From IMG/VR virus record IMGVR_UViG_3300028800_000001, positions 186,001 to 250,000 of that record: a stretch of 64,000 bases of DNA; one strand, given 5' to 3'. A program made the position numbers and the translations under genes. Each line of letters starts with the position of its first letter. The first letter of the stretch is position 1. Positions 19,096 through 33,142 of the stretch are shown piece by piece. The notes under the pieces were generated by a model. It did not search any database and was not told the origin of the DNA. It saw only the letters and a list, made by a program, of their open reading frames with translations.

Positions 19096-19098
19096 GAA

Positions 19099-19236
19099 GA
19101 GTGAGACAAACAAACGAAGAAACTCTTTTTGAAGACTGCCTGTACCATTCGGCTACATACACGGATACCCGTCTACGGCTGGACTCGAACCAACATGTCG
19201 TCTTTGGTTGAGAACATTTCCTCAACAGCCTCACTC
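19099..19236 (-). ncRNA. yrlA: YrlA-type Y RNA unit 1
   Basis: GAGUGAGGCUGU...GUUUGUCUCACUC; T arm GUUGG-UUCGAGU-CCAGC, capped acceptor, D arm GCC..GGC. Confidence 0.85.
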
Positions 19237-19245
19237 GATAGAGGA

Positions 19246-19300
19246 AGTATAGCACACCCTTTGCGATACGTCAAGCGTTTCTTCTATGAGTTTTCAGAAA
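19246..19300 (-). promoter_or_regulatory. promoter of Y-RNA array
   Basis: TTGACG-17-TATACT with extended TG; TTTCTGAAAA box upstream. Confidence 0.8.
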
Positions 19301-19514
19301 GATTAGAAATCTCTTCCCGCTCACAGGAAAGATGATTGAGCAGATCGGTTGCGGCGTCATGCGCACCATGCACATCATCTGTGTAGCGCGCCTCGCTATT
19401 GTCGTAGCAGACAATGAGCTCTCCATGCTCGTGATAAAAAGGAAGTCCTGCTTGCGCGCACAGGTTCTTCACATCGTTCGGAGTATAATAATCAGGGTTT
19501 TCAAACTGTGTCAC
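19284..19514 (-). CDS. hypothetical protein
   Basis: 76-aa ORF, GGAGG RBS. Confidence 0.55.
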   Translation of the reverse strand: MTQFENPDYYTPNDVKNLCAQAGLPFYHEHGELIVCYDNSEARYTDDVHGAHDAATDLLNHLSCEREEISNLSENS

Positions 19515-19950
19515 TTTTGACCTCTTCTTTTAGCACACGGCGCTTTTGTACTTCATCCCAAACGGTGCGCTCTGCGAGCGTATTCAAATCTTCGGTGGCC
19601 GCTGGATCACTTTCAGCACACGGCCTCCATCCGTTCTCCCATTTGCACCAGAAACCATACTCACGGCACTCACGTATCCCAGGAAAGACACCATCCCATT
19701 TAAGGAGATGTGGCTCCAGGTGTTGCTCGTAGAGATCAGCCATTTCGTCAGTCAGTCCATTGGCGTAAATCCACGGAAAGCGCTGCTCCATTGTATCCGG
19801 CTCGATACCAAAGTAGAGATATTTGCATTCATCTTGAAGCATCTGCACGCCGCAGAAGGGGCAAATGTCTACGTCGCAGCCACCCTCATGCACTTCGCCA
19901 AAGGTGGCACCACAATCGTGACAATGATCTTGTAGTTCAAGCGGTTTCAT
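19501..19950 (-). CDS. Cys-rich Zn-binding hypothetical protein
   Basis: CHDC...HxxxCDxxxCPFC motif. Confidence 0.65.
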   Translation of the reverse strand: MKPLELQDHCHDCGATFGEVHEGGCDVDICPFCGVQMLQDECKYLYFGIEPDTMEQRFPWIYANGLTDEMADLYEQHLEPHLLKWDGVFPGIRECREYGFWCKWENGWRPCAESDPAATEDLNTLAERTVWDEVQKRRVLKEEVKSDTV

Positions 19951-20434
19951 GTGGCTCCTCTATCTTTGCCAGTACCAAGCGCTCTGGCCCACGATCATTG
20001 TTGTCCTGTTTCCAATAAAGCACTTCCACCTCATTTTGAAATGCGGCAAGCTGCAAGATGGCAAGCGGCTCTCCCGTGAGTCGATCTTCAGGATAGCAGA
20101 AAATCATCAATCCATTGGCCCCAAAATCGCACTTGAGGTGCAGCACTCTACCACTCACGCTATCTTCAACCGAATAAATTGTACTCATCCTACGTCGCTC
20201 AACAATCTGATTGCTGTCCACTCGCATTCGCCATCTTCGTAACGTATCCAGCGTTCATCAGCACTCGCATGATATCCACTAGGAGTACTCTGCTCATCGG
20301 CTGGATCGCCTGGAAGATGCAGCACTATACCAAGTTGGCCGTGACGATTTCCTCCTGGCTCTTCATGAAGAACACGTGTGCCTCGATCAAATTTCACTTT
20401 TTATTTCTCACTTTCTCTTTTTTTTATAGAGGTA

Positions 20435-20508
20435 TGCAGAAGACGAGATTCGAACTCGCATTCTCCTACTTGGAAGGCAGGCACGATTGCCATTTACGCT
20501 ACTTCTGC
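20435..20508 (-). tRNA. tRNA-Gly(TCC)
   Basis: cloverleaf, anticodon loop CT-TCC-AA. Confidence 0.85.
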
Positions 20509-20750
20509 GTGCGTTTTCTCTGAATACACTGGAAAACAAACCCCTTAAAGATTGTTACCAAGTTATTCTCTTTGTCCGTAATGCGAACGGTACTTTCCGG
20601 CTCCATTGACTTGACGAACCATGCGTAAACTTGCAGTGCTTCACGTACAGTTTCAGCACGCGTTGAAGCCTGCGTCATCTCTTTGAGTTCGTCAAGTCGC
20701 TCAATCTCTTCTTCGAAGAAGTCAAATTGCACCCGTATCTTTGGTTTCAT
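20499..20750 (-). CDS. ribbon-helix-helix (CopG-like) protein
   Basis: RVQFDF...TRAETVREAL; paralogs at 25196-25671. Confidence 0.65.
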   Translation of the reverse strand: MKPKIRVQFDFFEEEIERLDELKEMTQASTRAETVREALQVYAWFVKSMEPESTVRITDKENNLVTIFKGFVFQCIQRKRTQK

Positions 20751-21272
20751 TGCCAATCCAACAACTCCAGATCAGGAATGCCGCGTGCCCACTCCATGAT
20801 CTTTTGCATCTTCTCTTCGTCTGGTAACCCGCATACATTCGGAAACACCACGAGATCGTGGCGAATAACACCCACTGTTTGCGGATGATAATACGAATAA
20901 CAACTCACCGGATAACCGGCTTCTAGTTCAAGACCGAGATGCTGGGCACGCTCAATCAAGTCGATCTGACGTAGTCCATCAATGATTGTCTGTTTGGTGA
21001 TGCGGATCATTCTTTCTCTCTGTCAAGCTTGTCAAAGATTACTGTTGACTGAATATACTCTTGTAAGAAATTCGACAAATCTTCGTTGGAAATCACGACA
21101 AGATCAACATCTTTTTGTAACGCCCTGGCAAGGTTCTCTTGACGCCCATACAGATCACTAAACGCCCTCCCACTCGGAAGCAATTCGCTTGGAAAGATCT
21201 GACGTACGCGCCCCTCTGCCAAAAGGAGTACATAGTAACCAGGGGCATCGCTGCGCTGTACACATCCACTCA

Positions 21273-21584
21273 TCATAGTTCACGCTCCAATGTTAACATG
21301 GCGGGTATCACCGACACATTTGAATTAAACTCATCACCACCAGTAGTCTTTTCACGAGACCACGTGACCCGCGCCCACGGTGGTTGCGCCTCTTGATATG
21401 CCTGCATCAAACGCAAGCCAAGCGCCTCACTGAAGTAACACTCACCCGTGATCACCTCTTCTAATTGCTTTCTGGTGAAACGGTAAAAAGGTTTGGTCTG
21501 ATTGCTTTCGATGTAGTCGTCAATGTACTCACAAATCTCATCGAACTGCATTTCTGTATACCCCTTTGGGGCTCCTCGTGGCAT
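21273..21584 (-). CDS. hypothetical protein, tandem paralog
   Basis: GAPKGYTEMQF..., similar to 21587-21898. Confidence 0.65.
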   Translation of the reverse strand: MPRGAPKGYTEMQFDEICEYIDDYIESNQTKPFYRFTRKQLEEVITGECYFSEALGLRLMQAYQEAQPPWARVTWSREKTTGGDEFNSNVSVIPAMLTLEREL

Positions 21585-21586
21585 CA

Positions 21587-21898
21587 CTAGTCCTCTCGTT
21601 CTAAACAAAGTGCAGCTTCGATTGTATGGCTGCGCGATATCGCGTCTTCACCGTATGTCGTTGTCTCTGGCCTCCAGTGCACACTTCCCCACTTCGGTTC
21701 TGCCTCTTGATACACCTGCATTAAACGCGTGATAAACGCTTTGCTTGCGAGAAAGTGCCCAGTGATCGCGCCATTCAGCTCGGAGACTTCAAAAATGTAC
21801 TCCTCTTGCGTCTGATTCTCCTCGATATAACGGTCAATATAATCAACCGCTTCCATGAATTGTTGTTCTGTATACCCACGCGGGGCTCCTGCGGCCAT
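21587..21898 (-). CDS. hypothetical protein, tandem paralog
   Basis: GAPRGYTEQQF... Confidence 0.65.
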   Translation of the reverse strand: MAAGAPRGYTEQQFMEAVDYIDRYIEENQTQEEYIFEVSELNGAITGHFLASKAFITRLMQVYQEAEPKWGSVHWRPETTTYGEDAISRSHTIEAALCLERED

Positions 21899-22173
21899 TA
21901 TACTTGCCCCTCTTTCTCTTGGCGATACGCATCCATCCGACTAAAATCAGGACAAATTTGCGCACCCTTTGGAATATGTGGCATACCAGTCGTCACCTTG
22001 CCGTCTACAATCTCAACATGAACGCACGTCGCAGAAAGGATACGGCGTAAGCGCTCGTACTCCACCATGTTACCAGCGTCAAGCGCGGCCTGTATCTCTG
22101 TGAGCAACAATTGACCCGCTTCTGAAAAGTCCATAATTTTCTCTTTTCTTTCTCTTTAAAACAACATTTTTAA

Positions 22174-22245
22174 TGGGACAGGTGAGGATCGAACTCACGA
22201 CCTAACGCTTAAAAGGCGCTTGCTCTACCGCTGAGCTACTACCCC
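22174..22245 (-). tRNA. tRNA-Lys(TTT)
   Basis: cloverleaf, CT-TTT-AA loop. Confidence 0.9.
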
Positions 22246-22341
22246 AAAATCGCCGGAAGATGAGTGTGAAAACAGAAATTTACATTCAGGAGTTCTCCAC
22301 CGAATACCCATTGGTGGAAAAACTCATCTTCTTTTGAGTAA

Positions 22342-22415
22342 TCTGGATGGCAGGATTTGAACCTGCGACCTCCTGATTCCAATTCAGGCACGCTACCGAG
22401 CTGCGCTACATCCAG
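22342..22415 (-). tRNA. tRNA-Pro(TGG)
   Basis: cloverleaf, AT-TGG-AA loop. Confidence 0.9.
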
Positions 22416-22831
22416 TCAGTTTTATCATAGGTAAGCTTTGCTACCCTTTTCACAATTCCATCAAAGAATCCGCGCTCCCTCTTTGGCAACATCTTTCCTG
22501 AAGCACGATCAATAGAGCTGCATTCTTCTGCAACACCTTCCTCCTCTACAAAGGCATCTCGTGGAAGACTGCCATAAAAAATATAGTCGCACATCCAACG
22601 ATGAAGTGTTCGTGTACTCTGGCGTTCTTTCGGTGTGGTCACTGCGAGAAGCATTACACCGTTGCCAGGACCACCAAGAAACTCAGGTTCCCAGACTTGA
22701 TTTTCTCTCAGGTAGTTTTCAATTGCATTCTGACGGCTATACCAAAGATCATTTATATCGTTTCTCCGAGCATAGCGCGCAAACGCTTTATAATCTTTGA
22801 GTAATTCCATTGCTTCTCGCAAATCTTTCAT
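22406..22831 (-). CDS. hypothetical protein
   Basis: 141-aa ORF in co-oriented run. Confidence 0.6.
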   Translation of the reverse strand: MKDLREAMELLKDYKAFARYARRNDINDLWYSRQNAIENYLRENQVWEPEFLGGPGNGVMLLAVTTPKERQSTRTLHRWMCDYIFYGSLPRDAFVEEEGVAEECSSIDRASGKMLPKRERGFFDGIVKRVAKLTYDKTDWM

Positions 22832-23368
22832 TTATTTCCATTCCCGCGCTTTTCTCTCTTCGTGTATCGCTGCGTAGATCATAAGCGTATCTTCAGGAAT
22901 TTCCAGCGCGCTTGCGAGTGCGTCCATATCACGGCTCACCCGATAACGCTCTAACGCGACTAGAAGATTGATTGCCATTGGCCCGACACTGGCGTCACTG
23001 ACCTTTCGCCTCTGGCGATAAAGATAGGTTGCCACTATATCGGCAAGAAATGCGTCCTCGCGTTCCATTGGTATCGTTACTAAATTATCCATCATTAGCA
23101 CTCCCGTATCGGTGATTTTGTATTCTTCTTTCTTGATGCAAACCAAATGAGCATAAATCCAACGCCGCTAGCGCACCCGAAGATGAGCCCAAAGAAAAAT
23201 CCAATGAGGAACGTTGCAAACATTACTTCTCCTTCCGCAACCTTGTGACGCCATCAATAATCGCATGAAATGCGCTGGCGTCTTTCTTCCACAGGTGCGA
23301 AAGATACATCCACATGGCGGCTGCGCCAACACTTATCCCTGAGAAAAAGCAAAGAAGCACTATAACAA

Positions 23369-23719
23369 TCATGATTGCTGTTCCTCAATCACCGTACTAT
23401 TGAGAACGGTCTGGCCGTTATATATTGCCGTTCCGTCTGCCTCGATTCTGAGATATCTCCCAACGACGGTACTTTGCACCGTATGTCCAAGCGGGGTATT
23501 TATAATTATTCTCTTGATAGTGTCTGGCACGTCGTGGATAGAAATCGTACGCTCTTGCGGCTCGTCCAGACTCTCTACCACCTCTGCCCCATCAAAGGTG
23601 ATATCTTCGCCCACAATGCGTAGCGAACCATCAGGACGACTAGAGGTCGTCACAAAACTGGTGTTCTTCGCAATCATTTCCTGTGCCCAGGTAGGAAGTG
23701 TTGATTTCAGTCTTTTCAT
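23369..23719 (-). CDS. hypothetical protein
   Basis: 116 aa, AAGGAG RBS. Confidence 0.6.
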   Translation of the reverse strand: MKRLKSTLPTWAQEMIAKNTSFVTTSSRPDGSLRIVGEDITFDGAEVVESLDEPQERTISIHDVPDTIKRIIINTPLGHTVQSTVVGRYLRIEADGTAIYNGQTVLNSTVIEEQQS

Positions 23720-23735
23720 GATTTCTCCTTTTTAA

Positions 23736-23828
23736 TGAGTGAGGGAAGGAATCGAACCTTCCACAATCTTCTTTAAAAGATATCCGGTTTACCGGTCGCC
23801 GGACCCATTTCCGTTCTGGCACCCACTC
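23736..23828 (-). tRNA. class II tRNA (Tyr-like) with expanded 11-nt anticodon loop
   Basis: acceptor, T arm and long variable arm intact; loop CGACCGGTAAA. Confidence 0.6.
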
Positions 23829-23897
23829 TTACCTAGTCAGTATACCGCAGTCCTCATCAAAAGACAAGCGTTTTTTCACGGTATTTTCTGAAGAAAT

Positions 23898-23990
23898 AGG
23901 ATCGTGCAGGAGTCGAACCTGCGCCTCTCGTACATCTACGAGCATACTCGCCGTCAGTGGATGTCTCCACCAGTCTTATACGAACGATCC
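23898..23990 (-). ncRNA. tRNA-like RNA with hairpin inserted in D loop and no canonical anticodon loop
   Basis: GGATCGT/ACGATCC acceptor, GCAGG-TTCGACT-CCTGC T arm, CTCGTA-GATG-TACGAG arm. Confidence 0.6.
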
Positions 23991-24938
23991 AAAAACTATG
24001 CCGCTTCCACCAGGATCAGATCACTATGAATAACCTGCTCCAGGCCACGGCTGATACTTACATGAATATTGTAGTATCCTTCAACCTCTGGCAGAGTGAT
24101 TGCGCCTTGAAAGTGTCCAGGGGCAATTTCACGAGGAGCTACAGAATCAACTATCGGCTTATTCTCAAGCGCTGTGTTGCCAGGAAGCTCTTGCTCCCAT
24201 ATCAATGAGACAGATGCATGTGTTCCTGTAACTACTTCGCCACGCGCTGTCTCCACCATAAAATCAAGTGGGAGGACGCTCCCAGGAAAATGACTATCAT
24301 CCAATTCAAAGTGTGCTAAAAACATGATACTTCTTTCTTTAGTATCTCCCCTCTGGAAGCTCTGGCCTATTCTTCTCGAACCACTCCTTTGCCTCGTACC
24401 ACTGGAACCTCATACGACTAAGCCCCTGTGTACATAGGTTCCAGATGTGATACTGCGTAAGTCTGCTAGCATCAATGCTGCCCCTGGCAATAAGCCCCTC
24501 TTCATCGGCAAGCTTTGCGCGAAGGGTCTGATCAATCCAGTCTTCTCGACTACTCATAATTATTCTTTCTCACTTCCCCATTCATCAAAGGACTCTCGTT
24601 AGTATCGTATTTCCTGCATTGCCAATCCTGGCAATGCAAATAGGAGTTTGCATACTCATCTGATACCCTCCACCCTTCCAGCCCTGAAACATCATTCCAT
24701 CACAGAAATAGGCTTTAGCAATCAGTTCCTCTACCGTTTGCGGCGTGGTATTCGGTCTTTTCTGGTTGTACCCAGAGAGATCAAAGCCCAGTGCCAATTG
24801 GTTGTAATCACCACGCCAACTGGCGAAGGCGGTTGGAAACGCCTCTTCAAAATCGAAGTGCACACGGTGCTTTCTGTCTGGCAGCAGTTCTAATGCCTAT
24901 ATCAGTTGTCCCAGGTTCATAATCAGCTCTTTCAATAA

Positions 24939-25012
24939 CACGAAAGGGGTGATTCGAACACTCATCTCACCGTTTTGGAGACGGTTGCTTTAGCCAATTA
25001 AGCTACTCTCGT
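24939..25012 (-). tRNA. tRNA-Trp(CCA)
   Basis: cloverleaf, CT-CCA-AA loop. Confidence 0.85.
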
Positions 25013-25195
25013 ATGAGCAAGGCTAGCGCACGCCATATTCGCGCTGCATAACAGTCCAGGCATCAGCAATTGAAAGTTTCTCACGCTGAATGCGGTATAA
25101 TTCACGCTGGACAGGGGTGAGCCGCTCGTATGCCTCTTGATCAGTCTTTGGTACCATTCTTTTCCTCCAAAAGTCTTTTCTCTTTTATTCTTCTC

Positions 25196-25432
25196 CTACA
25201 AGCGAAAGAAAAAATTCGCCTCTAAACGAAATACCAACTCGCCGTCTTCGCTGCGCACTTCCAAGATGCGCTTCTCATTGCTTTGTTCAAGTAACCATTC
25301 ATATGCGTGGAGCGCGGCCCGTAGCACCTCTGGCTTCGAGACATCCTTCTCTTCGCAGAGTGTTTCCAGACGCGCAAACTGACGATCAGAAAAATCAAGC
25401 TGGACGCGTTGACGTTTTTCATCGTTAGGCAT
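25196..25432 (-). CDS. ribbon-helix-helix protein
   Basis: RVQLDF...SKPEVLRAAL. Confidence 0.65.
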   Translation of the reverse strand: MPNDEKRQRVQLDFSDRQFARLETLCEEKDVSKPEVLRAALHAYEWLLEQSNEKRILEVRSEDGELVFRLEANFFFRL

Positions 25433-25671
25433 TATGATTTCCTTCGCAGAAGATGAAAGAGCGTTGCAACTTCTGTTTGGTACACCAGTTCACCGCTCTT
25501 TTCATGAAGTTCGAATGTGCGCTCTCGATTTTTTGCTAGCCACGCGTACATACGCACTGCTGCGCGTACAAATTCCGGCTTTGTCATTTCTACCTCTTGA
25601 GACAAGGCATCAAACGCTTCAAAGGAAGCAAACACTTGATCAATCTCTTTGATAATTTGTTCTTCGTTCAT
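25432..25671 (-). CDS. RHH-like paralog
   Basis: TKPEFVRAAVRMYAWL similar to neighbour. Confidence 0.55.
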   Translation of the reverse strand: MNEEQIIKEIDQVFASFEAFDALSQEVEMTKPEFVRAAVRMYAWLAKNRERTFELHEKSGELVYQTEVATLFHLLRRKS

Positions 25672-25680
25672 ACCAGTCCC

Positions 25681-25863
25681 TTAGCGTTTCACGTATGCGT
25701 TGATTCCTATAAGCACATTCGTGCCTTCAACCTGCTGGTTACCAGAGGTCGTAGCAACACTAATTGATTTGCCAGTGGCGGTAAGACCACCGCGCTGCGT
25801 GAGATCAATGACGATAGTAAGTTTTTTCTTGTCGTCCGAGACAGTCATTTCGACATTTTTCAT
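25681..25863 (-). CDS. small beta-rich protein
   Basis: MKNVEM...GKSISVATTSGN, strong RBS. Confidence 0.65.
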   Translation of the reverse strand: MKNVEMTVSDDKKKLTIVIDLTQRGGLTATGKSISVATTSGNQQVEGTNVLIGINAYVKR

Positions 25864-25893
25864 TATTTTTTCTCCTTTACAACTATTTTAAAA

Positions 25894-26003
25894 AGTTGTG
25901 CGCAGAGGGATTCGAACCTTCAAGACTTTTCCTGCAACCCCAAGCAGAAAAGCCGTCTGACACATGTCAATATCAGCGTTTCACCAATAACGGTACACAC
26001 AAC
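25894..26003 (-). ncRNA. non-canonical tRNA with ~10-bp acceptor stem and very long variable arm
   Basis: GTTGTGTGTA/TGCGCACAAC, T arm TTCGAAT, ~11-bp extra arm, 8-nt anticodon loop. Confidence 0.55.
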
Positions 26004-26005
26004 AA

Positions 26006-26076
26006 TTCTCCTACCTCGATTCGAACGAGGAACACTTGGTTCAAAGCCAAGCAAGTTACCGTTACTCCATAGGAGA
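26006..26076 (-). tRNA. tRNA-Gln(TTG)
   Basis: cloverleaf, CT-TTG-AA loop. Confidence 0.9.
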
Positions 26077-26080
26077 TCGA

Positions 26081-26150
26081 TAGAGCGTAGCGGGATCGAA
26101 CCGCTCGTACAGGACTACACCTGCCACATCACCAAGATGTGTCACGCCCT
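26081..26150 (-). ncRNA. atypical tRNA-like RNA (6-bp D stem, 6-nt anticodon loop)
   Basis: AGGGCGT/ACGCTCT, AGCGG-TTCGATC-CCGCT, GCAGG-TGTAGT-CCTGT. Confidence 0.55.
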
Positions 26151-26243
26151 CTTGGAACACTCTCCTCGCGACCTTGAGTGCCCATCCACACAATCTGTGA
26201 GTCAGGAGACCGGCGATCAACCCGATATACCCTTTCTCACTTG

Positions 26244-26318
26244 TGGTGCCAGCGGGTAGGATTGAACTACCGACACCGAGCTCTTCACGCTCGTGCTCTA
26301 CCACTGAGCTACACTGGC
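26244..26318 (-). tRNA. tRNA-Phe(GAA)
   Basis: cloverleaf, GT-GAA-GA loop, encoded CCA. Confidence 0.92.
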
Positions 26319-26320
26319 AT

Positions 26321-26472
26321 ACGCGCATGCTGAAGAGTCGAACTTCAGACTTCCCTGCGAAAGAGATCAGGTAGCTACTACTGACGTTTTCCCTCTTTTG
26401 AGCACGCTAGCAACACTTCAAAAGCTGGACTCTTCGCAAAAGCGTGCTTGAGCCACAAACACCCCCGCGCAT
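26321..26472 (-). ncRNA. ~150-nt tRNA-like RNA with large insert
   Basis: T arm CTGAAG-TTCGACT-CTTCAG; AGCACGCT/AGCGTGCT helix. Confidence 0.4.
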
Positions 26473-26477
26473 GATTT

Positions 26478-26930
26478 CTAGTTATTGGCCTCTATAATAG
26501 CGCTCAAACGAGCGCGCTGCTCTGCATCTAGTCGTCCCATCCACTCCACCGTAATTACGCACATATCCTCAAAGCTAAGCTCAATATCGTGAGGCGTTAC
26601 GCCATCAGGGCAATAGCGAAGTACTGTCTTTTCAGGAAGCGCAGTAAAATCCATCGCAAGTTCAGTATTAATCCCAATATTATTGGGATCACCACCAAAG
26701 AGCACATGGTACACTTCTGGCGAAAGCCCCTGAAGGACAAATCCACCCCTGTCATCATCATCGAGATAATATTCATCGTTGATCAAGTCCAGATGATAAT
26801 TGGCTTCCTGCAATCGTCCGAAGACGAGACCGCTCGTAAGAAAGTACACCTCGCCTGAAATGCGGCGACCATCACTGGTATAGACGTACCGCGTCTCTTT
26901 GCGTTCTAACTGATCTTCCATTCTACACAT
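26478..26930 (-). CDS. hypothetical protein
   Basis: ~150-aa ORF in co-oriented run. Confidence 0.55.
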   Translation of the reverse strand: MCRMEDQLERKETRYVYTSDGRRISGEVYFLTSGLVFGRLQEANYHLDLINDEYYLDDDDRGGFVLQGLSPEVYHVLFGGDPNNIGINTELAMDFTALPEKTVLRYCPDGVTPHDIELSFEDMCVITVEWMGRLDAEQRARLSAIIEANN

Positions 26931-27763
26931 CCTTCTTTAAACAAGGGATCAACGTGTACGAGAGAAGTCCCTTTTCCGCAACGCTACAGAGGATCAACTG
27001 ACGCATTGTTTCGCTGAGTCCACGTCCACCCTCGACAGGAAGCACACCGGCATCAATGAGCACCTGCTCTGTACTTCCAAAGAGCCGATGATTATGATCT
27101 TTGCAAAGCTCTAAAAGCTCATAGATGGCAATTGCATCTTTGCGCGCAAACAAACTTTCCAGCACTAAGCGACTTGACATGACTGCGACCATCGGTACCT
27201 GTGTGCCATTGGTCAGCGTTGCCATTTCTATTTCTTCTGTCATAGATATTTTTCTCTTTTCATTTCTTGTTCAAATGCTTCCTCGCGCCTCTCCATACTT
27301 CTATAGCTGCAACTCATATGGTGGTGACAGACGCCGCAAAGATAGAGCGCCGTGTACAGATCTTGCGGTGCATACTTTCCATCAATAAAAGTATAGTCCT
27401 TTTTGTCGCGAATAAGAGCACAAGAGTCACCCTTTTCGCCGCACTCATCGCAGAGATAATGCAACGATAGACTTGGAAGACTGATAAACTGTTCTTGCGT
27501 AAGATTAGTAATCATTCTTCGCCTCCTATTCTTGCATTGATTCGAAATCAGCACGATCACTAGCCGCCCATCCCTGTTCTACATCGGTCTCTGCTTTCCA
27601 ATAGAAATCCTCCCAGGAAAAGCCTTCGCCAGTACTAGAACGAGCACCAATCTTTTTCGCAATCACGTGAATTTTCTCTTCCATTTGTTCAGGTGAAGAA
27701 TGGTGCTCACGAAATTCAATAGTTATTTTCATATACTCCCTCCATATATACCAAGTAATTATA

Positions 27764-27896
27764 TCCAGCTAGAGCGATTCGAACACTCTCCTGCTCCCCT
27801 GTTCGCCTGACTCTCACCAGCCCTGGAGGACCATCCCCAAAGAGGCGAGACAAAAGGCTACTAAGGGGTGCTATGCACGCCATACATCGTAGCTGA
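27764..27896 (-). ncRNA. tRNA scaffold with ~60-nt hairpin replacing anticodon loop
   Basis: TCAGCTA/TAGCTGG acceptor, D arm, CCCCT/AGGGG stem enclosing long hairpin, T arm TTCGAAT. Confidence 0.6.
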
Positions 27897-27926
27897 TCAA
27901 AATATCCTATATCGATATAGGATAAA

Positions 27927-27998
27927 TACCTCATGTGAGACTCGAACTCACGATCTGCTCATTGAGAATGAGCTGTCCTGCCGCTAGACGAATGAGGC
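27927..27998 (-). tRNA. tRNA-Glu(CTC)
   Basis: cloverleaf, TT-CTC-AA loop. Confidence 0.88.
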
Positions 27999-28010
27999 AA
28001 ATGGTGCCAA

Positions 28011-28096
28011 TTTCCAGAGGCAGAGTCGAACTGCCCTGAACCATTATTGCGACTGTACGGCCCCAACTCCGATGGTTGGCTCTCGAAGCTCTGGAA
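28011..28096 (-). ncRNA. tRNA scaffold with 27-nt anticodon insert and reduced D arm
   Basis: TTCCAGA/TCTGGAA, AACCAT/ATGGTT, GGCAG-TTCGACT-CTGCC. Confidence 0.55.
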
Positions 28097-28368
28097 AAGT
28101 GTGCCGTTTCTTGCAACGCGACCATCAGAGGTAGGCACACGCATCGTTCTGCTCTCCGTAGTGTTTTGTGTGCTTACGGATAAACCCACAGACAAGTTGG
28201 CTGCGCTCGACATTCGAAGCACGTGCGATACGCTCTCAATGAAGATGGGCGAAGAGCGGATCATTGGGTACTTGCCAATCCCAATACTGGCAAGCGCAAC
28301 CTTTTTTGTGATGGCGACACGAATGCACGCGTCATTAAACCTGCGTTTCCAGTGCTGGGTACCATCAA

Positions 28369-28442
28369 TACGGGTGGCGAGAATTGAACTCGGCTATTTC
28401 CTGTTTGAAGGACAGGCGGCTCGACCGTTTGCCTTCACCCGC
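28369..28442 (-). tRNA. tRNA-Glu(TTC) (C33 variant)
   Basis: cloverleaf, CC-TTC-AA loop. Confidence 0.75.
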
Positions 28443-28446
28443 AGGT

Positions 28447-28514
28447 TGCGAACAGAACGGAGTCACACCGTCATCTTCCTCTTACAAGGTGCTCTGTTCT
28501 TGAGCTATGTTCGC
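28447..28514 (-). tRNA. degenerate tRNA
   Basis: GCGAACA/TGTTCGC, GCTC..GAGC D arm, short anticodon arm, TGTGACT T loop. Confidence 0.45.
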
Positions 28515-28546
28515 GGTGTACCCGCATCTTCATGCTTCGACACCAG

Positions 28547-28617
28547 GAGACGAATGTAGGAGTTGCACCTACACGGGAGGTCATGACGCTCCTCGTAACC
28601 CTGCCGGTTCCTCGTCC
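28547..28617 (-). tRNA. degenerate tRNA (CAT anticodon?)
   Basis: GGACGAG/TTCGTCT, T arm TGCAACT, GT-CAT-GA. Confidence 0.4.
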
Positions 28618-28984
28618 AAATAAGAAGTTCACGTATGCATTGTCTACATCAGCCGCAAACGATGTGGTAGCGTGCATCGCCAGCAGCAAAGGTGTTGCAC
28701 CTTCTCTTCATAAACTTCTTTGTCAAAGGCCGATGGACGTTAACCGTTTATCCTCGCCGTCGCTTGCGAGGCACCTTTGGACACCCGTAATGCTCTTCTG
28801 TTGTACTTCCAAAAGAACTGCTAGAAATAACGTCAGTAGTCGCATTGTTTTTTCATGCTTTCGCATGACGGAATAAGTCACATGCGGGAGTCCCTTACTT
28901 CTCATGAATAAGTAGTGCGCATGCTAACACGACACAAACCTCCATACACTTTCTACTGACGGCTTGACCCATTACTGAGTCAAA

Positions 28985-29056
28985 TCTAGTTGGCTGGACT
29001 TGAACCAGCGACCTCTCGCGTCCGAGGCGAGTATGCTACCGCTGCACCACAACTAG
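28985..29056 (-). tRNA. tRNA-Pro(CGG)
   Basis: cloverleaf, CT-CGG-AC loop. Confidence 0.9.
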
Positions 29057-29061
29057 AGATA

Positions 29062-29153
29062 TTGGACACCCTGGATTCGAACCAGGACAGGTGATCAACC
29101 TGCTACTTCCATTTTCATGCCCAATTACAGCATAGTCTAGAATACTGCGTCCA
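29062..29153 (-). ncRNA. atypical tRNA-like RNA
   Basis: TGGACGC/GTGTCCA, CCTGG-TTCGAAT-CCAGG, extra hairpin; no canonical D or anticodon arms. Confidence 0.45.
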
Positions 29154-29209
29154 GCCCCCCATTTCCCATCAAAGGAACTTTGAATGAATAGCCAGGAGGA
29201 CACCGGCTA

Positions 29210-29259
29210 AGGACAGAGAAGGACTTGAACCTTCTGACACCCAAAACGTGTGCCTATCC
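29210..29259 (-). ncRNA. tRNA minihelix-like element
   Basis: acceptor plus T arm (TTCAAGT) with one short hairpin. Confidence 0.35.
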
Positions 29260-29270
29260 GCAAGAAACAA

Positions 29271-29345
29271 GGGTGACTATCCAGATTTGAACTGGAGTTA
29301 GGAGAGCCACAATCTCCTGTGTTAGACCACTACACTATAGCCACC
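29271..29345 (-). tRNA. tRNA-His(GTG)
   Basis: cloverleaf, TT-GTG-GC loop, G-1. Confidence 0.9.
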
Positions 29346-29891
29346 AAGAGTATTAGCGTCGCTTCTCTTTCGCTTCGCTGATCTTTCGATACGCGTCTCT
29401 TCGCGTATCGTTGACCGTATCAATAACAGCGATCACGCTATCAGTTCCGACATATTCTACAACGAAGAACTTTGGGCACTTCGCACTATTCTGTTCAACC
29501 GCCTCGTAAATGATATAGCCATCACGCATCGTGTACGAGCTGTACTTCATCGCGCCCTTATCGGTTTCCTGGGCTTCCTCGAAAACGGCGAACGGGATGC
29601 GCGCCCCTTCTTGTAACGTAATCATCATTTTCTCCTGCAACTGCCTGGAACGCTCGTGCGCATGACTCACTGCACACATACACTTTTTTCTCTGGTGCCC
29701 CTGGTACGCCAAAATCACCGTAGATAACAGCGTAAACGTACGCAAGCCCAATCCAGACGCGTCCAAAGTGTCCTTGTCTGCACGCTGCGCAGCGATGATA
29801 AAAATGCCACTGCGACAGCCCTTCGACCCACAGACGCCCATATAAATACTCTGTCATGCACGCCTCTTTCAAAATTGTGTAAAAATAAAGC

Positions 29892-30040
29892 CCCACACCC
29901 TCTGATTCGAACAGAGATACTTGCTGTCTGGTATCAGCAGAACGAAAAGCGGTATGCAGTCTTGTCCTCTGTAGAGGAAGAGAAAGTGATACCATGCCTG
30001 CTTCGCTCAGCAAACGTTTTACCGTTTAAACTAGGTGGGT
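29892..30040 (-). ncRNA. tRNA scaffold with ~75-nt insert in anticodon arm
   Basis: canonical D arm GTTT-AAACGGTA-AAAC, TTGCTG/CAGCAA stem, T arm CTCTG-TTCGAAT-CAGAG. Confidence 0.6.
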
Positions 30041-30115
30041 AAGAGAGAAGAACAACATTGCTTTTTACATTGCTATACTCTTCGCCATTATGGACCCCGT
30101 TGTTCTTCTTTTTAG

Positions 30116-30171
30116 AGTATAGCGCATCACGCTTTGAATTGTCAAGACTTATTTCTCTGTATTTTCAGAAA
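30116..30171 (-). promoter_or_regulatory. sigma70-type promoter with TTCTGAAAA box (upstream of tRNA cluster)
   Basis: TTGACA-18-TATACT. Confidence 0.75.
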
Positions 30172-30718
30172 CCGTGTACTCTTCGATCAGGCCACGCCTG
30201 CGAGCATTGTGTATTTCGATATAGAGGTCTGACGGCTCTTCAACCGTGATAAAAACGTAACAGTAACCAACCTCTCGAAAGAGATCGTACTTCAGCGTAG
30301 GATAGGTACCAGCGAGCTTTTCTAACCAGGGCATTGTGCGCTCGTATGCTTCGCCAGCAACGCTAACACGAAAACTATAAAGTGTGCTCTGCATGAACGC
30401 GTCCTTTCTTAATAAAGATATTTTGCGGCGAGGATTGCAATCTCTTCTGAGAGGTTATTTTCGGTAACCGCGATACGCTGTGCCTGGAGATATCCGCCCC
30501 TTTTAAAAGCGAAGGCGAAACCAAGACGCTCTAGCTCGTGACGGATCGCCACATAATCTTTGCCTGCGACCATTCTATCGGAGCCCGATTGAAATTGGCG
30601 GTAACACGCGGCCATTGCTGCAAGCATTGGTTTAACCCAATCGTTTTGTGATTTGATTTGAAGCGCGTTCATCTTTTTCTCCTTGAATAATGTTTTCGTT
30701 TATTTCTTCTATAGAGGA

Positions 30719-30773
30719 AGTATAGCGCACTCGTCTCCGTCCGTCAAGGGTTATTTCTCTGTATGTTCAGAAA
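30719..30773 (-). promoter_or_regulatory. sigma70-type promoter with upstream box
   Basis: TTGACG-17-TATACT, TTTCTGAACATA. Confidence 0.75.
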
Positions 30774-31292
30774 CAATTTGATACCGACCATCTATAAAGC
30801 GAAATACTAAAGGGCGAGAGCGGTGCGCGCCACGTCGTGCGGTCTTGGAAAAGAGCTTTTTCCCTTCCTGCTCTGCTCTGAGAGCGTGCTTGCTCTTCTG
30901 GCGTGCGGTATGCTTCACACTTTTGCCACCGCGCTGCTTGCTGGTACTGTCGTGACCTGGGCAGCAGTTCATTTGCTGCCCATCTTTGCCGTAAGGCTTC
31001 ATTCGTTCTCCCCTTCTACTCAGCGTAGTCGTCGTACACGCACACCACGAAATCAGCATCCAAATCCGACTGATCAACTATGCACTGACCGTATTTTTTG
31101 ATTAACGCTTTAAAAGCTTTCAAATCAGCAACTTCGATATAACCGTTTTTTGCACCGTTCAATTCTTCGAAGTGGATTTCTAACGAGATAGAATTTAAGA
31201 ATATTTTCATGACCGTTTCTCCTTGACTGTTCTTAACTACAAAAGCGCGTCCCAATCGAGGAAGAAGTTTTTCGTTTATTTCTTATACACGA

Positions 31293-31347
31293 AGCATAGC
31301 GCAATCAAAGAGAAACGTCAAGTCTTTTTTCATGAGTTTTTCAGAAT
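31293..31347 (-). promoter_or_regulatory. sigma70-type promoter with upstream box
   Basis: TTGACG-17-TATGCT, TTCTGAAAA. Confidence 0.7.
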
Positions 31348-31705
31348 AGTATTTTTTCTCTGAAAATGTCTTTTCCGCCACAGACGAACAATGCCTTTGC
31401 GGTGACACCAGTAGAACACGCCATCCTCTCGTATCCAATTAAAAGCCAGGGAGAGCGGCTTTGAGAGGAAGTCTAGGGTGCTGTAGACGGCGTCTCGCTC
31501 TATAGACCTGAGTACTGGTACAAAGCGCTCCCTGAGCTCCTCCTTGCGTCCACTTTGCATTTCCCAACGTGCGGTGGGACTCTGCAAAACATTGAGCCAC
31601 ATAATCCACACGAGACGTAAAATCTCATAGACTTCTTTGACTATCCAGACTACGAACATTAAGAGAAAGGCGATACCGAGAAGCACTAAAGAGAGGTGGA
31701 TAATA

Positions 31706-32227
31706 TTATTCATGGTCTTTCACACGCTCCTGCAACATTTCGCGCATCCAGGCGCGGTCTTTTTCATTACTATGCTGTAGCATCCAATGCGGCCATGTAT
31801 AAAACGGACCATCAGGCGAGAATGCATGTGCACTATAAGGAAAACGCTTCTCGCCCACCGGCCAATACTCACCCACATAGGTGCCAGAAGGGGTATCTTT
31901 GCGAATATTATAAATGTAGTATTCGTGAGAACTATCGCTGCGCTCCCAGAGCACAAAGGTTCCCGATTGATACATGGTTTGCTCTTGCGACGAAGCGTCT
32001 TTTTCAAACTGATCATTTTTATAACGATACTTTTTGCGCTCCACGTCGCTCTTGAGCAGTACAAGATAATAGGTAGACGGTTTTGCACGTCTACGATAAA
32101 AAATGAGGGGAAGCAGCGCGCCACCTGTTTCTTTTGCAAAGGTATTCGCGGCCTCTTTGGCACGTCCATATTTTTGAAACGTTTCCGCGCTTTCATAGTT
32201 TCCTTCTTCAGTAATTGTCCAGCGCAT
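31706..32227 (-). CDS. hypothetical protein
   Basis: 173-aa ORF with AAGGA RBS. Confidence 0.6.
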   Translation of the reverse strand: MRWTITEEGNYESAETFQKYGRAKEAANTFAKETGGALLPLIFYRRRAKPSTYYLVLLKSDVERKKYRYKNDQFEKDASSQEQTMYQSGTFVLWERSDSSHEYYIYNIRKDTPSGTYVGEYWPVGEKRFPYSAHAFSPDGPFYTWPHWMLQHSNEKDRAWMREMLQERVKDHE

Positions 32228-32665
32228 AATTATTTCCTTTTATGCAATTGCAAATCGAAAAACATCACTAACGCTCCTGCTCCAAGGCAAAGCGTAAGCA
32301 ATGTTCCTATACATCCATAAAGTATATGATCAAGACTAGAAAACTCAGAAATGGAAACTCCCAAGTAAGTGAATATTCCAAAGGCGAGCGCTCCTGCAAT
32401 CATAATAAACATGGATGCGAAAGCAAGCCAATACCTTTTGCTAGATTCGACACGAAGAGGTGGAGAGTAATTATCCCAGAGCTTTCTCGCTACTTTCCTC
32501 CATCTTCCTAGATATGCTTTCTGCATCGCAGGCGTATCTTCCATGCCGAAAAGCTCAGCCCCTTCCTTGAAAGTTTCTACTAATCCTGGCACTATCTCTT
32601 TTTCCCAAAACTTTTCAAACTCTTCATTCATTATCATCTCCATTCTTGAATTATCATTTCAGTAA

Positions 32666-33142
32666 TTATCCAGCGCATAGCTCTGCCTCCTGCTCTATCA
32701 CCCGCCATACGTGGCGAAGTATCTTTGGATAGTTATGTTTTGTTTTCGTTCTATGAAGATAGACTAAATGCGCTATCGCTTCAGACTGCGTACAACGATC
32801 AGCCTGTGGATAGGTAGCTGACGGCTCATAAATCATGCCACGATGCCCATCAAAGACATCCTGAAAGCCCTCAAAAGTAGCTGCGTACTCCAAGAGGGTT
32901 GGATGCTTTCGTAGGTACGCATGCCAGAGCAAGAGATAGTATTCATGCTGAATGATAATAGCGGGAATATAGGTGGCGTCCAGTAAAAGGAAGGTGGCCT
33001 GCTCTCCTTTGGGCTTTTTATAGGGATAGCCATTCTCGTTACGTTTAGCATCTTGATACCATTGTTCAATCGTGCGTACTCCAAGATAGGCATAAAGCGC
33101 ACTAAAGCGATGATCGCCTTTGGAATCGCATCGTAAAATCAT
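32666..33142 (-). CDS. possible NADAR-like protein
   Basis: SKGDHRFSALYA...TIEQWYQxxK...LWxxYLRxHPxLL pattern resembles NADAR fold. Confidence 0.35.
   Translation of the reverse strand: MILRCDSKGDHRFSALYAYLGVRTIEQWYQDAKRNENGYPYKKPKGEQATFLLLDATYIPAIIIQHEYYLLLWHAYLRKHPTLLEYAATFEGFQDVFDGHRGMIYEPSATYPQADRCTQSEAIAHLVYLHRTKTKHNYPKILRHVWRVIEQEAELCAG

What the first reader, a model, noticed from the sequence alone, without database searches (positions are those of the whole stretch)
23736..30040. Family of tRNA scaffolds whose anticodon or D arm is replaced by unrelated structured inserts
Seen: among normal tRNAs are elements with intact acceptor stems and TTCGA T arms but ~27-75-nt inserts in the anticodon arm (27764-27896, 28011-28096, 29892-30040, probably 26321-26472). 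Others have a hairpin in the D loop (23898-23990), 6-, 8- or 11-nt anticodon loops (26081, 25894, 23736), or are reduced to a minihelix (29210). Stems remain paired, which argues against simple decay, and inserts are far too short for group I introns. Inference: the tRNA body acts as a processing and stability handle for functional RNA cargo (decoys for anticodon nucleases, synthetases or tRNA-sensing defences). This mirrors the adjacent Y RNAs, which also replace the anticodon arm.
Basis: partly seen in the sequence, partly recalled or inferred. Interest (0 to 1): 0.8.

Follow-up and report, generated by a model that had tools for sequence, protein, structure and literature searches.

The report
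Non-decoding tRNA-like RNAs in phage array
A 327-kb soil phage carries, among its ordinary tRNA genes, about a dozen tRNA-shaped genes that cannot read codons; at least two have kept their odd extra structures through evolution, so they are probably working RNAs of unknown job rather than broken genes.

Summary
All elements lie on the minus strand of a tRNA array (window 20435-30041) in a complete 327-kb phage genome from rhizosphere metagenomes. Besides 10-11 canonical tRNAs there are about 12 units with an acceptor stem and a T arm but abnormal D, anticodon or variable regions. Several details need correcting: loop sizes, where the extra sequence sits in D, G, H and I, and the doubtful model for F.

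Two elements can be compared with a roughly 75-90 % identical relative (L031). E (27764-27896) keeps 43 pairs, 7 of them through changes on both sides. A (29892-30040) keeps 32 pairs, 10 of them through changes on both sides, and its insert segments keep identical lengths although the sequence is about half changed. These two are therefore selected structured RNAs, not decaying genes.

They are unlikely to be introns. No single excision gives a normal cloverleaf, the inserts are too short for group I introns, and the phage has no splicing endonuclease gene.

D is a strain-specific insertion, so not every unit is conserved. The inserts are unrelated to each other.

The closest precedents are T4 species 1 RNA, YrlA Y RNAs and the tmRNA tRNA-like domain. 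Function (decoy, Rsr partner or other) remains inferred, because no RNA data exist.

The parts
29892..30040 (-). Element A. It has an acceptor stem (30040-30034 / 29899-29893), a D arm (30031-30016) and a T arm (29916-29900). Helix X (30014-30010 / 29924-29920) sits where the anticodon stem should be. On top of helix X is an 86-nt branched insert. The insert contains a heptamer GGUAUCA (29993-29987), an inner hairpin (29983-29960) and a local hairpin with the 7-nt loop CUGAUAC (29942-29926). The heptamer can pair with that loop.
   Evidence: ARAGORN with introns. MFE z-score -3.96. Compared with the L031 homologue, 32 pairs are 94 % paired and 10 changed on both sides, against 0-2 in slid controls. 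RNAalifold independently finds the acceptor, helix X, the heptamer-loop helix and the T arm. Insert segment lengths of 16, 7 and 44 nt are identical in both lineages.
27764..27896 (-). Element E. It has an acceptor stem, a D arm and a T arm. A 78-nt rod (27871-27794) replaces the anticodon arm. The rod is made of a 7-bp basal helix, an internal loop AGUA/GAA (27862-27859 / 27804-27802) that fits the loop E consensus, a 4-bp helix, a second internal loop, a 15-bp apical helix and the hexaloop AUGGUC.
   Evidence: fold; 43 pairs, 7 with changes on both sides across three lineages; 96 % paired, 1-4 of 500 shuffles reach the observed values, slid controls give 0-1. All five substitutions in the 99.4 % lineage keep pairing.
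28011..28096 (-). Element D. It has a perfect 7-bp acceptor stem, a T arm and a 54-nt middle part without a D stem. It is present only in the window's lineage and is flanked by imperfect 10-nt direct repeats.
   Evidence: Absent from the variant lineage and from L031. Direct repeats shown. No other copy in the genome.
26323..26472 (-). Element F. It has a T arm and a 3' acceptor strand lying 4 nt upstream of tRNA-Phe. The 5' partner is ambiguous, giving either an 85-nt or a 150-nt model.
   Evidence: z-score -0.89. No substitutions in the variant lineage.
29063..29153 (-). Element C. It has a 7-bp acceptor stem and no D arm. Its anticodon arm is double length (two 5-bp helices and a 7-nt loop). 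It also has a variable-arm hairpin and a T arm, and it ends 5 nt before tRNA-Pro(CGG).
29210..29259 (-). Element B. A 50-nt unit made of an acceptor stem, one 4-bp hairpin with the 7-nt loop GUUUUGG, and a T arm.
28447..28514 (-). Element K. A cloverleaf in which the anticodon loop is replaced by a GUAA tetraloop. The variant lineage has GUGA, so the GNRA form is kept. The T loop is UGUGACU.
   Evidence: Rfam tRNA 34 bits. z-score -2.71. Variants.
28546..28617 (-). Element M. A weak cloverleaf with an 8-nt loop containing CAU and a non-canonical T loop.
   Evidence: ARAGORN at relaxed threshold. Folds.
26081..26163 (-). Element G. An 83-nt unit with the loop CUUGGUG, a long variable-arm hairpin and a weak D arm, 4 nt before tRNA-Gln.
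   Evidence: ARAGORN at default settings. Structure. Not found by the Rfam tRNA model at E<=10.
25894..26000 (-). Element H. It has a 7-bp acceptor stem extended by leader-trailer pairing, a 3-bp D stem, a 7-bp stem with a 6-nt loop, and an 11-bp variable arm. Its T stem has an A.C mismatch, which is repaired to A-U in the variant lineage.
23898..23990 (-). Element I. A 93-nt unit with perfect acceptor and T arms. It contains an internal hairpin with a GACA tetraloop and a 6-bp hairpin with a GAUG tetraloop.
23737..23829 (-). Element J. A class-II-like unit with an 11-nt loop (or a UAAA tetraloop) and a variable-arm hairpin.
   Evidence: ARAGORN with introns at default threshold. Rfam tRNA-Sec 23 bits, below threshold.
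30116..30145 (-). Promoter-like site TTGACA-18-TATACT (11 of 12 consensus positions), about 75 nt upstream of A.
   Evidence: Similar copies lie at 30747-30719, 31321-31293 and 19274-19246.
20435..29344 (-). The canonical tRNAs of the same array: Gly, Lys, Pro(UGG), Trp, Gln, Phe, Glu(CUC), Glu(UUC), Pro(CGG) and His.

Best explanation
These are a mixed set of non-decoding tRNA-like RNA genes built on a tRNA body. They do not share one insert family.

Shown:
- They lie in the phage's tRNA array, on its strand, downstream of sigma-70-like promoters.
- They sit 4-11 nt from canonical tRNAs.
- Each has an acceptor stem plus a T arm, but lacks a normally placed 7-nt anticodon loop.
- For A and E, both the body and the replacement structure are kept by compensatory evolution.

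Inferred:
- The acceptor/T-arm minihelix lets host RNase P, 3' trimming and CCA addition cut them out of the poly-tRNA precursor as stable RNAs.
- The replaced arms keep them off the ribosome.
- The arms present protein-binding surfaces. E has a rod with a loop E-type internal loop. A has a rod or branch in which an anticodon-loop-like heptamer is paired in cis.

Most likely they bind or titrate proteins that recognise tRNA. That would make them part of the phage's RNA-damage and counter-defence kit: Rsr with five Y RNAs next door, and PNKP plus an Rnl1-type ligase elsewhere in the genome. Single units are gained and lost between near-identical strains, so some members may be young, dispensable or decaying.
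For: - Clustering and strand.
- Short spacers to canonical tRNAs.
- Promoter-like site upstream of A.
- E: 43 pairs, 7 with changes on both sides; 96 % paired; slid controls 0-1. Five of five substitutions in the 99.4 % lineage keep pairs.
- A: 10 of 32 pairs changed on both sides; slid controls 0-2. RNAalifold recovers the helices by itself. Insert segment lengths are identical despite about 50 % sequence change.
- The neighbouring tRNA-His has diverged about as much, so A evolves like a constrained RNA gene.
- Synteny is conserved in L031: A with the downstream ORFs, and E with the 68-aa ORF.
- K keeps a GNRA tetraloop, and H gains a T-stem pair in the variant.
- Context: Rsr, Y RNAs, PNKP and Rnl1.
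- Precedent: T4 rnaC has end pairing, a canonical T arm and two long hairpins.
Against: - No RNA data. No RNA run could be listed, so transcription, processing and stability are not shown.
- Only one diverged relative (4 kb) and one lineage about 1 % away exist. For B, C, F-K and M the microdiversity test is weak: with re-drawn boundaries, 1 pair broken against 2.9 expected.
- D is a strain-specific insertion.
- F has no consistent model.
- No binding partner is identified, and the neighbouring ORFs have no informative family.
- The phage encodes no CCA-adding enzyme, so maturation would depend on the unknown host.
Confidence: 0.6

Rival explanations
1. They are intron-containing pre-tRNAs. 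The inserts are removed by an endonuclease plus the phage PNKP/Rnl1 heal-and-seal pair, which yields decoding tRNAs (Ile, Val, Tyr, Met and others) that the phage otherwise lacks.
For: - ARAGORN calls A and its L031 homologue as intron-bearing tRNAs at default threshold.
- A and its homologue contain a local hairpin with a proper 7-nt loop with U33 and A37. The loops are CUGAUAC and UUGACAC.
- The loop pairs with the insert, as anticodon-intron helices do in eukaryal pre-tRNAs.
- PNKP and Rnl1 are present.
- The canonical tRNA set lacks Ile, Val, Tyr and Met.
Against: - No single contiguous excision gives a normal cloverleaf in A. The result is either a 10-bp anticodon stem or a 9-11-nt unpaired variable loop.
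- The extra sequence lies 5' of the loop, not at position 37/38.
- E, I and K offer no anticodon loop at all.
- The inserts are 27-86 nt, too short for group I introns. No intron or ribozyme family appears in Rfam scans at E<=10.
- No splicing endonuclease domain is found in the phage, and no RtcB.
- The 'anticodon' differs between the two lineages (GAU against GAC) while its partner co-varies. That points to selection on the helix, not on a codon.
Confidence: 0.12
2. They are pseudogenes: tRNA genes damaged by insertions, deletions and recombination in a fast-changing array, with no function.
For: - Units come and go between lineages that are 99.4 % identical. D is an insertion with flanking repeats, and the variant has an extra 72-nt unit.
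- K, M, B and C are absent from L031.
- F has no coherent fold.
- J looks like a class-II tRNA-Tyr with 4 extra loop bases.
- Rfam's tRNA model misses most of the units.
Against: - Compensatory changes and conserved segment lengths in A and E.
- No pair-breaking change was seen in the first tally of 11 stem substitutions.
- The T-stem mismatch in H is repaired in the variant.
- A is the first gene after a strong promoter-like site.
- Another phage array (L028, 35 tRNAs) has almost no such units, so decay is not a general feature of arrays.
Confidence: 0.15
3. E, and perhaps others, are circularly permuted YrlA-type Y RNAs that bind the phage Rsr (Ro60). They have the same tRNA-like core and rod, but with an open acceptor stem and a capped rod.
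For: - Rsr lies at 16750-18648, with five Y RNA units at 19245-18680.
- In E the rod strand that runs towards the tRNA core carries GGCGAAC, close to the YrlA motif cggCgaAUG (PMC4201824).
- The strand that runs outwards carries UUUGUCUC. That 8-mer has only 9 minus-strand copies in the genome, two of them at the 3' ends of Y1 and Y2.
- That outward strand matches the Y3 3' end with z 5.1.
- M. smegmatis YrlA is opened by RNase P and receives CCA (PMC4201824), which produces a similar topology.
Against: - No YrlA hit on E at E<=10.
- The conserved C of the motif is U in both other lineages.
- The other 19 strand comparisons are not significant, and the motif choice was post hoc.
- E lies 9 kb from rsr, whereas YrlA genes lie within 4 kb (PMC4201824).
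- A, F and the others show nothing comparable.
Confidence: 0.2
4. They are cis-acting parts of the mRNAs: tRNA-like punctuation or leaders that direct RNase P/Z cleavage, or that regulate the small ORFs just downstream.
For: - A, E, H and J each end 20-50 nt before an ORF with a Shine-Dalgarno sequence.
- The A-ORF and E-ORF pairs are syntenic in L031.
Against: - Canonical tRNAs would serve for punctuation, so this does not explain selection on 80-nt inserts.
- B, C, F, G and K are flanked by tRNAs, not by ORFs.
Confidence: 0.12

Closest known systems
Bacteriophage T4 species 1 RNA (rnaC), a small stable RNA in the T4 tRNA cluster
   Same: It is encoded inside a phage tRNA cluster on the tRNA strand. 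It is 139 nt long. Its 5' and 3' ends pair next to a canonical T arm (GGGUUCGAAUCCCGG). Two long hairpins stand in place of the D and anticodon arms. Its function is still unknown (my own knowledge).
   Different: There is no detectable sequence relationship. T4 has two such RNAs next to 8 tRNAs, whereas here about 12 stand next to 10-11 tRNAs. A and E keep a D arm.
YrlA-type bacterial and phage Y RNAs (Rfam RF02553; PMC4201824)
   Same: They have a tRNA-like core (T arm, D arm, acceptor-like stem) with a long rod where the anticodon arm would be. They are encoded near rsr, and phages carry them. M. smegmatis YrlA is cut by RNase P and receives CCA.
   Different: The topology is reversed. In YrlA the RNA ends are in the rod and the acceptor is a capped hairpin. 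Here the ends form the acceptor and the rod is capped. None of these elements gives an Rfam YrlA hit. They lie 5-11 kb from rsr.
The tRNA-like domain plus helix 2 of tmRNA
   Same: The acceptor stem is formed by the RNA ends, there is a T arm, and a long helix leaves from the anticodon-arm position.
   Different: These elements have no messenger part, no pseudoknots and no tag reading frame. They are 50-150 nt rather than about 360 nt. ARAGORN finds no tmRNA.
Intron-containing tRNA genes (bacterial group I introns; archaeal and eukaryal protein-spliced introns)
   Same: Extra sequence lies inside the anticodon arm. In A, a segment of the insert pairs with the anticodon-like loop.
   Different: The inserts are far shorter than group I introns and give no Rfam intron hit. 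The position is not 37/38. There is no bulge-helix-bulge motif and no endonuclease gene. Excision does not restore a cloverleaf.
Engineered tRNA scaffolds for RNA expression (Ponchon and Dardel; my own knowledge)
   Same: The anticodon arm is replaced by a structured RNA, while the acceptor, D and T arms give processing and stability.
   Different: That is a laboratory design. The natural elements here have no known cargo function.

Membership tests
Canonical tRNA (Rfam RF00005) | Score at or above the 29-bit gathering threshold of the tRNA covariance model | tested here: not met
   A, B, C, D, E, F, G, H and I give no tRNA hit even at E<=10. J scores only 23 bits, and against tRNA-Sec. K (34 bits) and 28369-28442 (43.6 bits) pass.
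Canonical tRNA (Rfam RF00005) | A 5-bp anticodon stem with a 7-nt loop at the normal distance from the D and T arms | tested here: not met
   E carries a 78-nt rod. In A the stem in the normal position carries an 86-nt branched insert. K and I have tetraloops. C has a double-length arm.
tRNA gene with a group I intron | An intron of about 200 nt or more with the group I core, inserted in the anticodon loop | tested here: not met
   The inserts are 27-86 nt. No Intron_gpI or ribozyme family appears at E<=10 in 19000-33000.
tRNA with a protein-spliced (bulge-helix-bulge) intron | A splicing endonuclease (PF01974) is available | tested here: not met
   No match in the phage genome at E<=1. The host is unknown, but its signals look bacterial (sigma-70-like promoters, Shine-Dalgarno sites).
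tRNA with a protein-spliced (bulge-helix-bulge) intron | Removing one contiguous segment restores a normal cloverleaf | tested here: not met
   For A and its homologue every single excision leaves a 10-bp anticodon stem or a 9-11-nt variable loop. E has no recoverable loop.
YrlA Y RNA (Rfam RF02553) | Covariance-model score (gathering threshold 69 bits) | tested here: not met
   The only YrlA hits are at 18970-19224, at 19-31 bits. None falls on the array elements.
YrlA Y RNA (Rfam RF02553) | RNA ends in the Rsr-binding rod and a capped acceptor-like stem | tested here: not met
   The topology is reversed in all the elements.
YrlA Y RNA (Rfam RF02553) | The GNCGAAN0-1G motif on the strand that enters the tRNA-like core | tested here: inconclusive
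   E has GGCGAACAG in the window lineage but GGUGAACAG in the two others.
YrlA Y RNA (Rfam RF02553) | Binding to Rsr | not testable with these tools
   This needs a pull-down or gel-shift assay with the phage Rsr (16750-18648).
tmRNA | A tRNA-like domain plus a tag reading frame and pseudoknots | tested here: not met
   ARAGORN finds no tmRNA in the window or the genome. The elements are 50-150 nt.
Stable tRNA-like RNAs of phage tRNA clusters (T4 species 1 type) | Encoded within a phage tRNA cluster on the same strand | tested here: met
   The T4 layout is shown.
Stable tRNA-like RNAs of phage tRNA clusters (T4 species 1 type) | End pairing plus a canonical T arm, with long hairpins in place of the other arms | tested here: met
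   T4 rnaC fold. A and E.
Stable tRNA-like RNAs of phage tRNA clusters (T4 species 1 type) | Accumulates as a discrete stable RNA processed by RNase P | not testable with these tools
   No RNA run could be listed.

The most novel reading that the evidence does not exclude
The array encodes a so far undescribed class of phage tRNA mimics with at least two designs.

1. E is a circularly permuted Y-RNA-like molecule. Its open acceptor end is made by tRNA processing enzymes, and its capped rod carries a loop E-type site for Rsr or another protein.

2. A is a tRNA-shaped RNA that can switch between two folds. In one fold a genuine-looking anticodon hairpin is displayed. In the other the same seven or eight bases are locked in a helix with a complementary 'codon-like' segment. 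The two sides co-varied when the anticodon-like triplet changed from GAU to GAC.

Such RNAs would act as non-translating baits or conditional tRNAs in the contest with host tRNA-cutting defences.
Probability: 0.2. Interest if true: 0.85.

Novelty: new variant of a known kind. Interest (0 to 1): 0.62.

Why it matters
Phage tRNA arrays are currently read as codon-supply or as replacements for host tRNAs destroyed by defence nucleases. Odd members are usually dismissed as pseudogenes.

Here about half of an array is non-decoding, and at least two members are under clear selection for structures that cannot work in translation. They sit in a genome that also carries Rsr with Y RNAs and a PNKP/Rnl1 repair pair.

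That gives a concrete, clonable set of natural 'tRNA-scaffold' RNAs. With them one can test whether phages use tRNA mimics as baits, sponges or adaptors. It may also bear on the function of T4 species 1 RNA, which to my knowledge is still unknown.

The work also shows a practical pitfall. Intron-mode tRNA finders stitch together neighbouring tRNAs in arrays.

Tried and rejected
Searches that found no relatives or no RNA data:
- Megablast of 23500-30200 against phage records: no match.
- Related loci through array ORFs: none.
- Related loci through Rsr (L001) and portal (L014): no tRNAs nearby.
- Homologue searches of two array ORFs returned only near-identical copies.
- Exact-pattern scans of viral contigs with E motifs: no hits.
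- RNA runs: none listed.
- Longer contigs of the L031 lineage: the longest is only 4.1 kb. As a result the roughly 87 % relative of Gln+G+F seen in run X2 could not be fetched.

Ideas tested and dropped:
- The idea that all inserts form one family. Pairwise local alignments show only T-arm similarity.
- A shared GCGAA motif. It is common in the region.
- A covariance model of A. It finds only A, its homologue and ordinary tRNAs, with no paralogues.
- A gapped D-arm...T-arm pattern in viral contigs. It mostly hit tandem tRNA pairs, and ARAGORN intron calls there are largely stitched neighbours.
- Chimera of two tRNAs as an explanation for A and E. Each has one D arm and one T arm, and its end pairing co-varies.
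- Pfam and PHROGs searches on ten array ORFs gave nothing informative.

Full report
WHAT THE WINDOW IS. The window is bases 186001-250000 of a single-contig, 327,295-bp virus record with direct terminal repeats, rated complete. It is found in rhizosphere metagenomes. Genes around the finding run on the minus strand.

Reading in that direction, the layout is:
- A promoter-like site, TTGACA-18-TATACT, at 30145-30116.
- A tRNA array from 30041 to 20435, mixed with small orphan ORFs.
- A cluster of five Y-RNA-like units at about 19245-18680, with its own promoter-like site and a terminator hairpin.
- A Ro60/Rsr gene at 18648-16750 (TROVE plus vWA_Ro60 domains).
- A portal gene with an intein at 16368-13486.

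Elsewhere the genome has a polynucleotide kinase-phosphatase and an Rnl1-type RNA ligase. It has no RtcB, no tRNA splicing endonuclease and no CCA-adding enzyme.

CHECK OF THE OBSERVATION. ARAGORN and Rfam agree on 10-11 ordinary tRNAs. With introns allowed, ARAGORN at its normal threshold adds exactly two genes in the whole genome, 29890-30041 and 23737-23829. Both are in the array and on its strand. Relaxed settings add 27764-27896, 26323-26471, 29062-29168 and others.

I also scanned independently for a T arm followed by a strand that pairs 25-260 nt upstream. That scan places nearly all G+C-rich T arms of the genome in window 19028-29957 on the minus strand. Non-canonical units sit 4-11 nt from canonical tRNAs: C-Pro 5, K-Glu 4, F-Phe 4, G-Gln 4, Gln-H 5, His-B 11, D-Glu 11. 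So the elements are real and clustered far beyond chance.

- In D the extra sequence may be a variable region.
- F has no acceptor pairing in register.
- G has a 7-nt loop and a long variable arm.
- H has a long variable arm.
- B keeps one extra hairpin.
- Three more units exist: C, K and M.

The inserts share no sequence with each other.

RELATIVES. Protein and DNA searches show that the phage is isolated. Three comparison sets were obtained.
1. Contigs carrying an identical 91-aa array protein gave one lineage about 99.4 % identical (L016-L021).
2. A metagenome scan with the anticodon arm of tRNA-Glu(UUC) gave L031. This is a 4-kb contig that is 72-97 % identical in patches and has a homologous array.
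3. Contigs laid on the window also showed a relative about 87 % identical around Gln, G and the end of F. I could not fetch it.

ELEMENT E (27764-27896). E has an acceptor stem, a D arm and a T arm. A 78-nt rod stands where the anticodon arm should be. Across the three lineages RNAalifold predicts 43 pairs, 7 of which changed on both sides and stayed paired. With that structure, 96 % of cells pair. Only 1-4 of 500 shuffles reach the observed values, and sliding the partners by 1-3 columns gives 0-1 compensatory pairs instead of 7.

All five substitutions in the 99.4 % lineage fall in stems and keep pairing. The T stem and part of the acceptor are completely re-written in L031 with pairing kept. 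The basal helix, the internal loop AGUA/GAA, the 4-bp helix and the apical hexaloop do not change. The AGUA/GAA loop fits the loop E (sarcin-ricin) consensus. That comparison rests on my own knowledge, not on a tool.

ELEMENT A (29892-30040). A is the first gene after the promoter-like site. In L031 a homologue sits at the same place, before the same pair of small ORFs and tRNA-His.

The two sequences differ as much as the two tRNA-His genes do. Even so, the acceptor, D arm, a 5-bp helix X in the normal anticodon-stem position, and the T arm all pair in both. Over 32 pairs, 10 changed on both sides, against 0-2 in slid controls.

The insert keeps identical segment lengths (16, 7 and 44 nt) although about half its bases differ. 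Its 3' end can form a hairpin with a proper-looking 7-nt loop, CUGAUAC in the window and UUGACAC in L031. The same loop bases are also exactly complementary to a heptamer earlier in the insert, GGUAUCA and GGUGUCA respectively. The change of the loop triplet from GAU to GAC is matched by A to G in the heptamer.

RNAalifold, run independently, chooses the heptamer-loop helix as 8 bp. Constrained folds give the two alternatives similar energies. I conclude that A is a selected structure with two competing folds. With two sequences I cannot say which one exists in the cell.

THE OTHER ELEMENTS. Only the lineage about 1 % away is available for these.
- In a first tally none of 11 stem substitutions broke a pair. 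One repaired the A.C mismatch in the T stem of H, and the tetraloop of K stayed GNRA.
- With re-drawn boundaries and a proper null model the signal is weak: 1 broken pair against 2.9 expected.
- D is missing from both other lineages. It is an insertion of about 97 nt flanked by imperfect 10-nt direct repeats, and it has no second copy in the genome.
- The variant lineage has an extra 72-nt tRNA-like unit after 28442.
- L031 lacks B, C, K and M. It has another unit with a 6-nt loop and a tRNA-Cys.

The array therefore exchanges single units quickly. Another phage lineage with 35 tRNAs in 13.7 kb has almost no unassigned T arms. A high share of non-canonical units is thus a feature of this phage and not of arrays in general.

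WHAT THEY ARE NOT.
- Group I introns: the inserts are 27-86 nt and no intron or ribozyme family is hit.
- Protein-spliced introns: there is no endonuclease gene, the extra sequence in A lies 5' of the loop, no single excision gives a cloverleaf, and E, I and K have no loop to recover.
- Stitched neighbours: this artefact is common when ARAGORN's intron mode meets tandem tRNAs. However, A and E each have one D arm and one T arm, and their end pairing co-varies.
- YrlA by the Rfam model: no hit, and the topology is reversed.

LINK TO THE Y RNAs. In E the rod strand that returns to the core carries GGCGAAC, close to the YrlA 5' motif (PMC4201824). The outgoing strand carries UUUGUCUC. That 8-mer has nine minus-strand copies in the genome, two of which end Y1 and Y2. 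The outgoing strand also matches the 3' end of Y3 with z 5.1.

Against this, the motif's C is U in the other lineages, the remaining comparisons are not significant, and the choice of motifs was post hoc. I treat a permuted Y RNA as a possibility of about one in five for E only.

CLOSEST PRECEDENT. T4 rnaC (species 1 RNA) lies in the T4 tRNA cluster. When folded here it shows end pairing, a canonical T arm and two long hairpins. To my knowledge its function has never been found. YrlA and the tmRNA tRNA-like domain share the idea of a rod in place of the anticodon arm.

MECHANISM AND CONFIDENCE.
- Shown: position, strand, spacing, fold, and selection on structure for A and E.
- Inferred: co-transcription from the promoter-like sites, excision by RNase P and 3' trimming, CCA addition by the host, exclusion from translation, and binding of some tRNA-recognising protein.

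The presence of Rsr with Y RNAs and of PNKP/Rnl1, which are known parts of phage answers to tRNA damage (PMC7824862), makes a role in that contest the best guess. No partner is identified. I give 0.6 to 'selected, non-decoding tRNA-like RNAs', and much less to any particular target.

VERDICT. I rate this a new variant of a known kind (tRNA-like stable RNAs of phage tRNA clusters and Y-RNA-like mimics), with moderate to high interest.

Noticed in passing
window 18680-19274 (-): Five tandem Y-RNA-like units, each starting near GGCUGU and ending near GUUUGUC. They are preceded by a promoter-like site, TTGACG-17-TATACT, and followed by a terminator hairpin just before rsr. Rfam YrlA scores are only 19-31 bits.
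   Followed up: partly
window 13486-16368 (-): Portal protein gene of 960 aa. It carries an intein splicing domain (residues 336-466) and a Mu F-like domain.
   Followed up: no
window 27995-28125 (-): Element D is a lineage-specific insertion of about 97 nt, flanked by the imperfect direct repeats GGCACACTTT and GGCACCATTT. Its donor is unknown and the genome has no second copy.
   Followed up: yes
L016:9066-9138 (after window 28442): The 99.4 % lineage has an extra 72-nt tRNA-like unit between K and tRNA-Glu(UUC). ARAGORN at relaxed threshold calls it Ser(GCU) without a long arm.
   Followed up: partly
window 27904-27923 (-): A 20-nt perfect palindrome followed by a short T run, lying between tRNA-Glu(CUC) and E. 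It is absent at this place in L031.
   Followed up: no
window 30116-30145, 30719-30747, 31293-31321, 19246-19274 (-): Repeated near-consensus sigma-70-like promoter modules with similar flanks.
   Followed up: no
window 56912-63285 (+): Two HTH plus GmrSD-N proteins flank a C-5 cytosine methylase, in a stretch of lower G+C content and reversed strand.
   Followed up: no
G000:C1:99198-99605 and 102167-102712 (outside the window): PNKP and an Rnl1-type RNA ligase, the T4-style tRNA heal-and-seal pair.
   Followed up: partly
L022:8330-13170: A contig from an NCBI assembly whose Rsr is 55 % identical. It has a Y RNA cluster with a tRNA-Gln inside it, followed by rsr, Rnl1 and PNKP in a row.
   Followed up: partly
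L082:7097-7245; L102:5723-5858 and 5976-6113; L051:10215-10389: Unrelated viral contigs carry single tRNA-like genes (one D arm, one T arm) with structured inserts of 36-72 nt. The phenomenon may therefore be wider than this phage.
   Followed up: partly
L088:10237-10338, L048:12281-12381, L103:3595-3692, L072:1718-1816, L052:315-412: Several unrelated viral contigs have tRNA-Ile(UAU)-like genes of about 100 nt with a long variable arm.
   Followed up: no
L037-L150: ARAGORN in intron mode reports many 'intron-bearing' tRNAs of about 150-160 nt in tandem arrays. These are the 5' half of one tRNA joined to the 3' half of the next, so they are an artefact to guard against.
   Followed up: partly
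G000:C1:22740-22834 (-), outside the window: A lone tRNA-like call with a 4-base 'anticodon' and a good T arm, far from the array.
   Followed up: no
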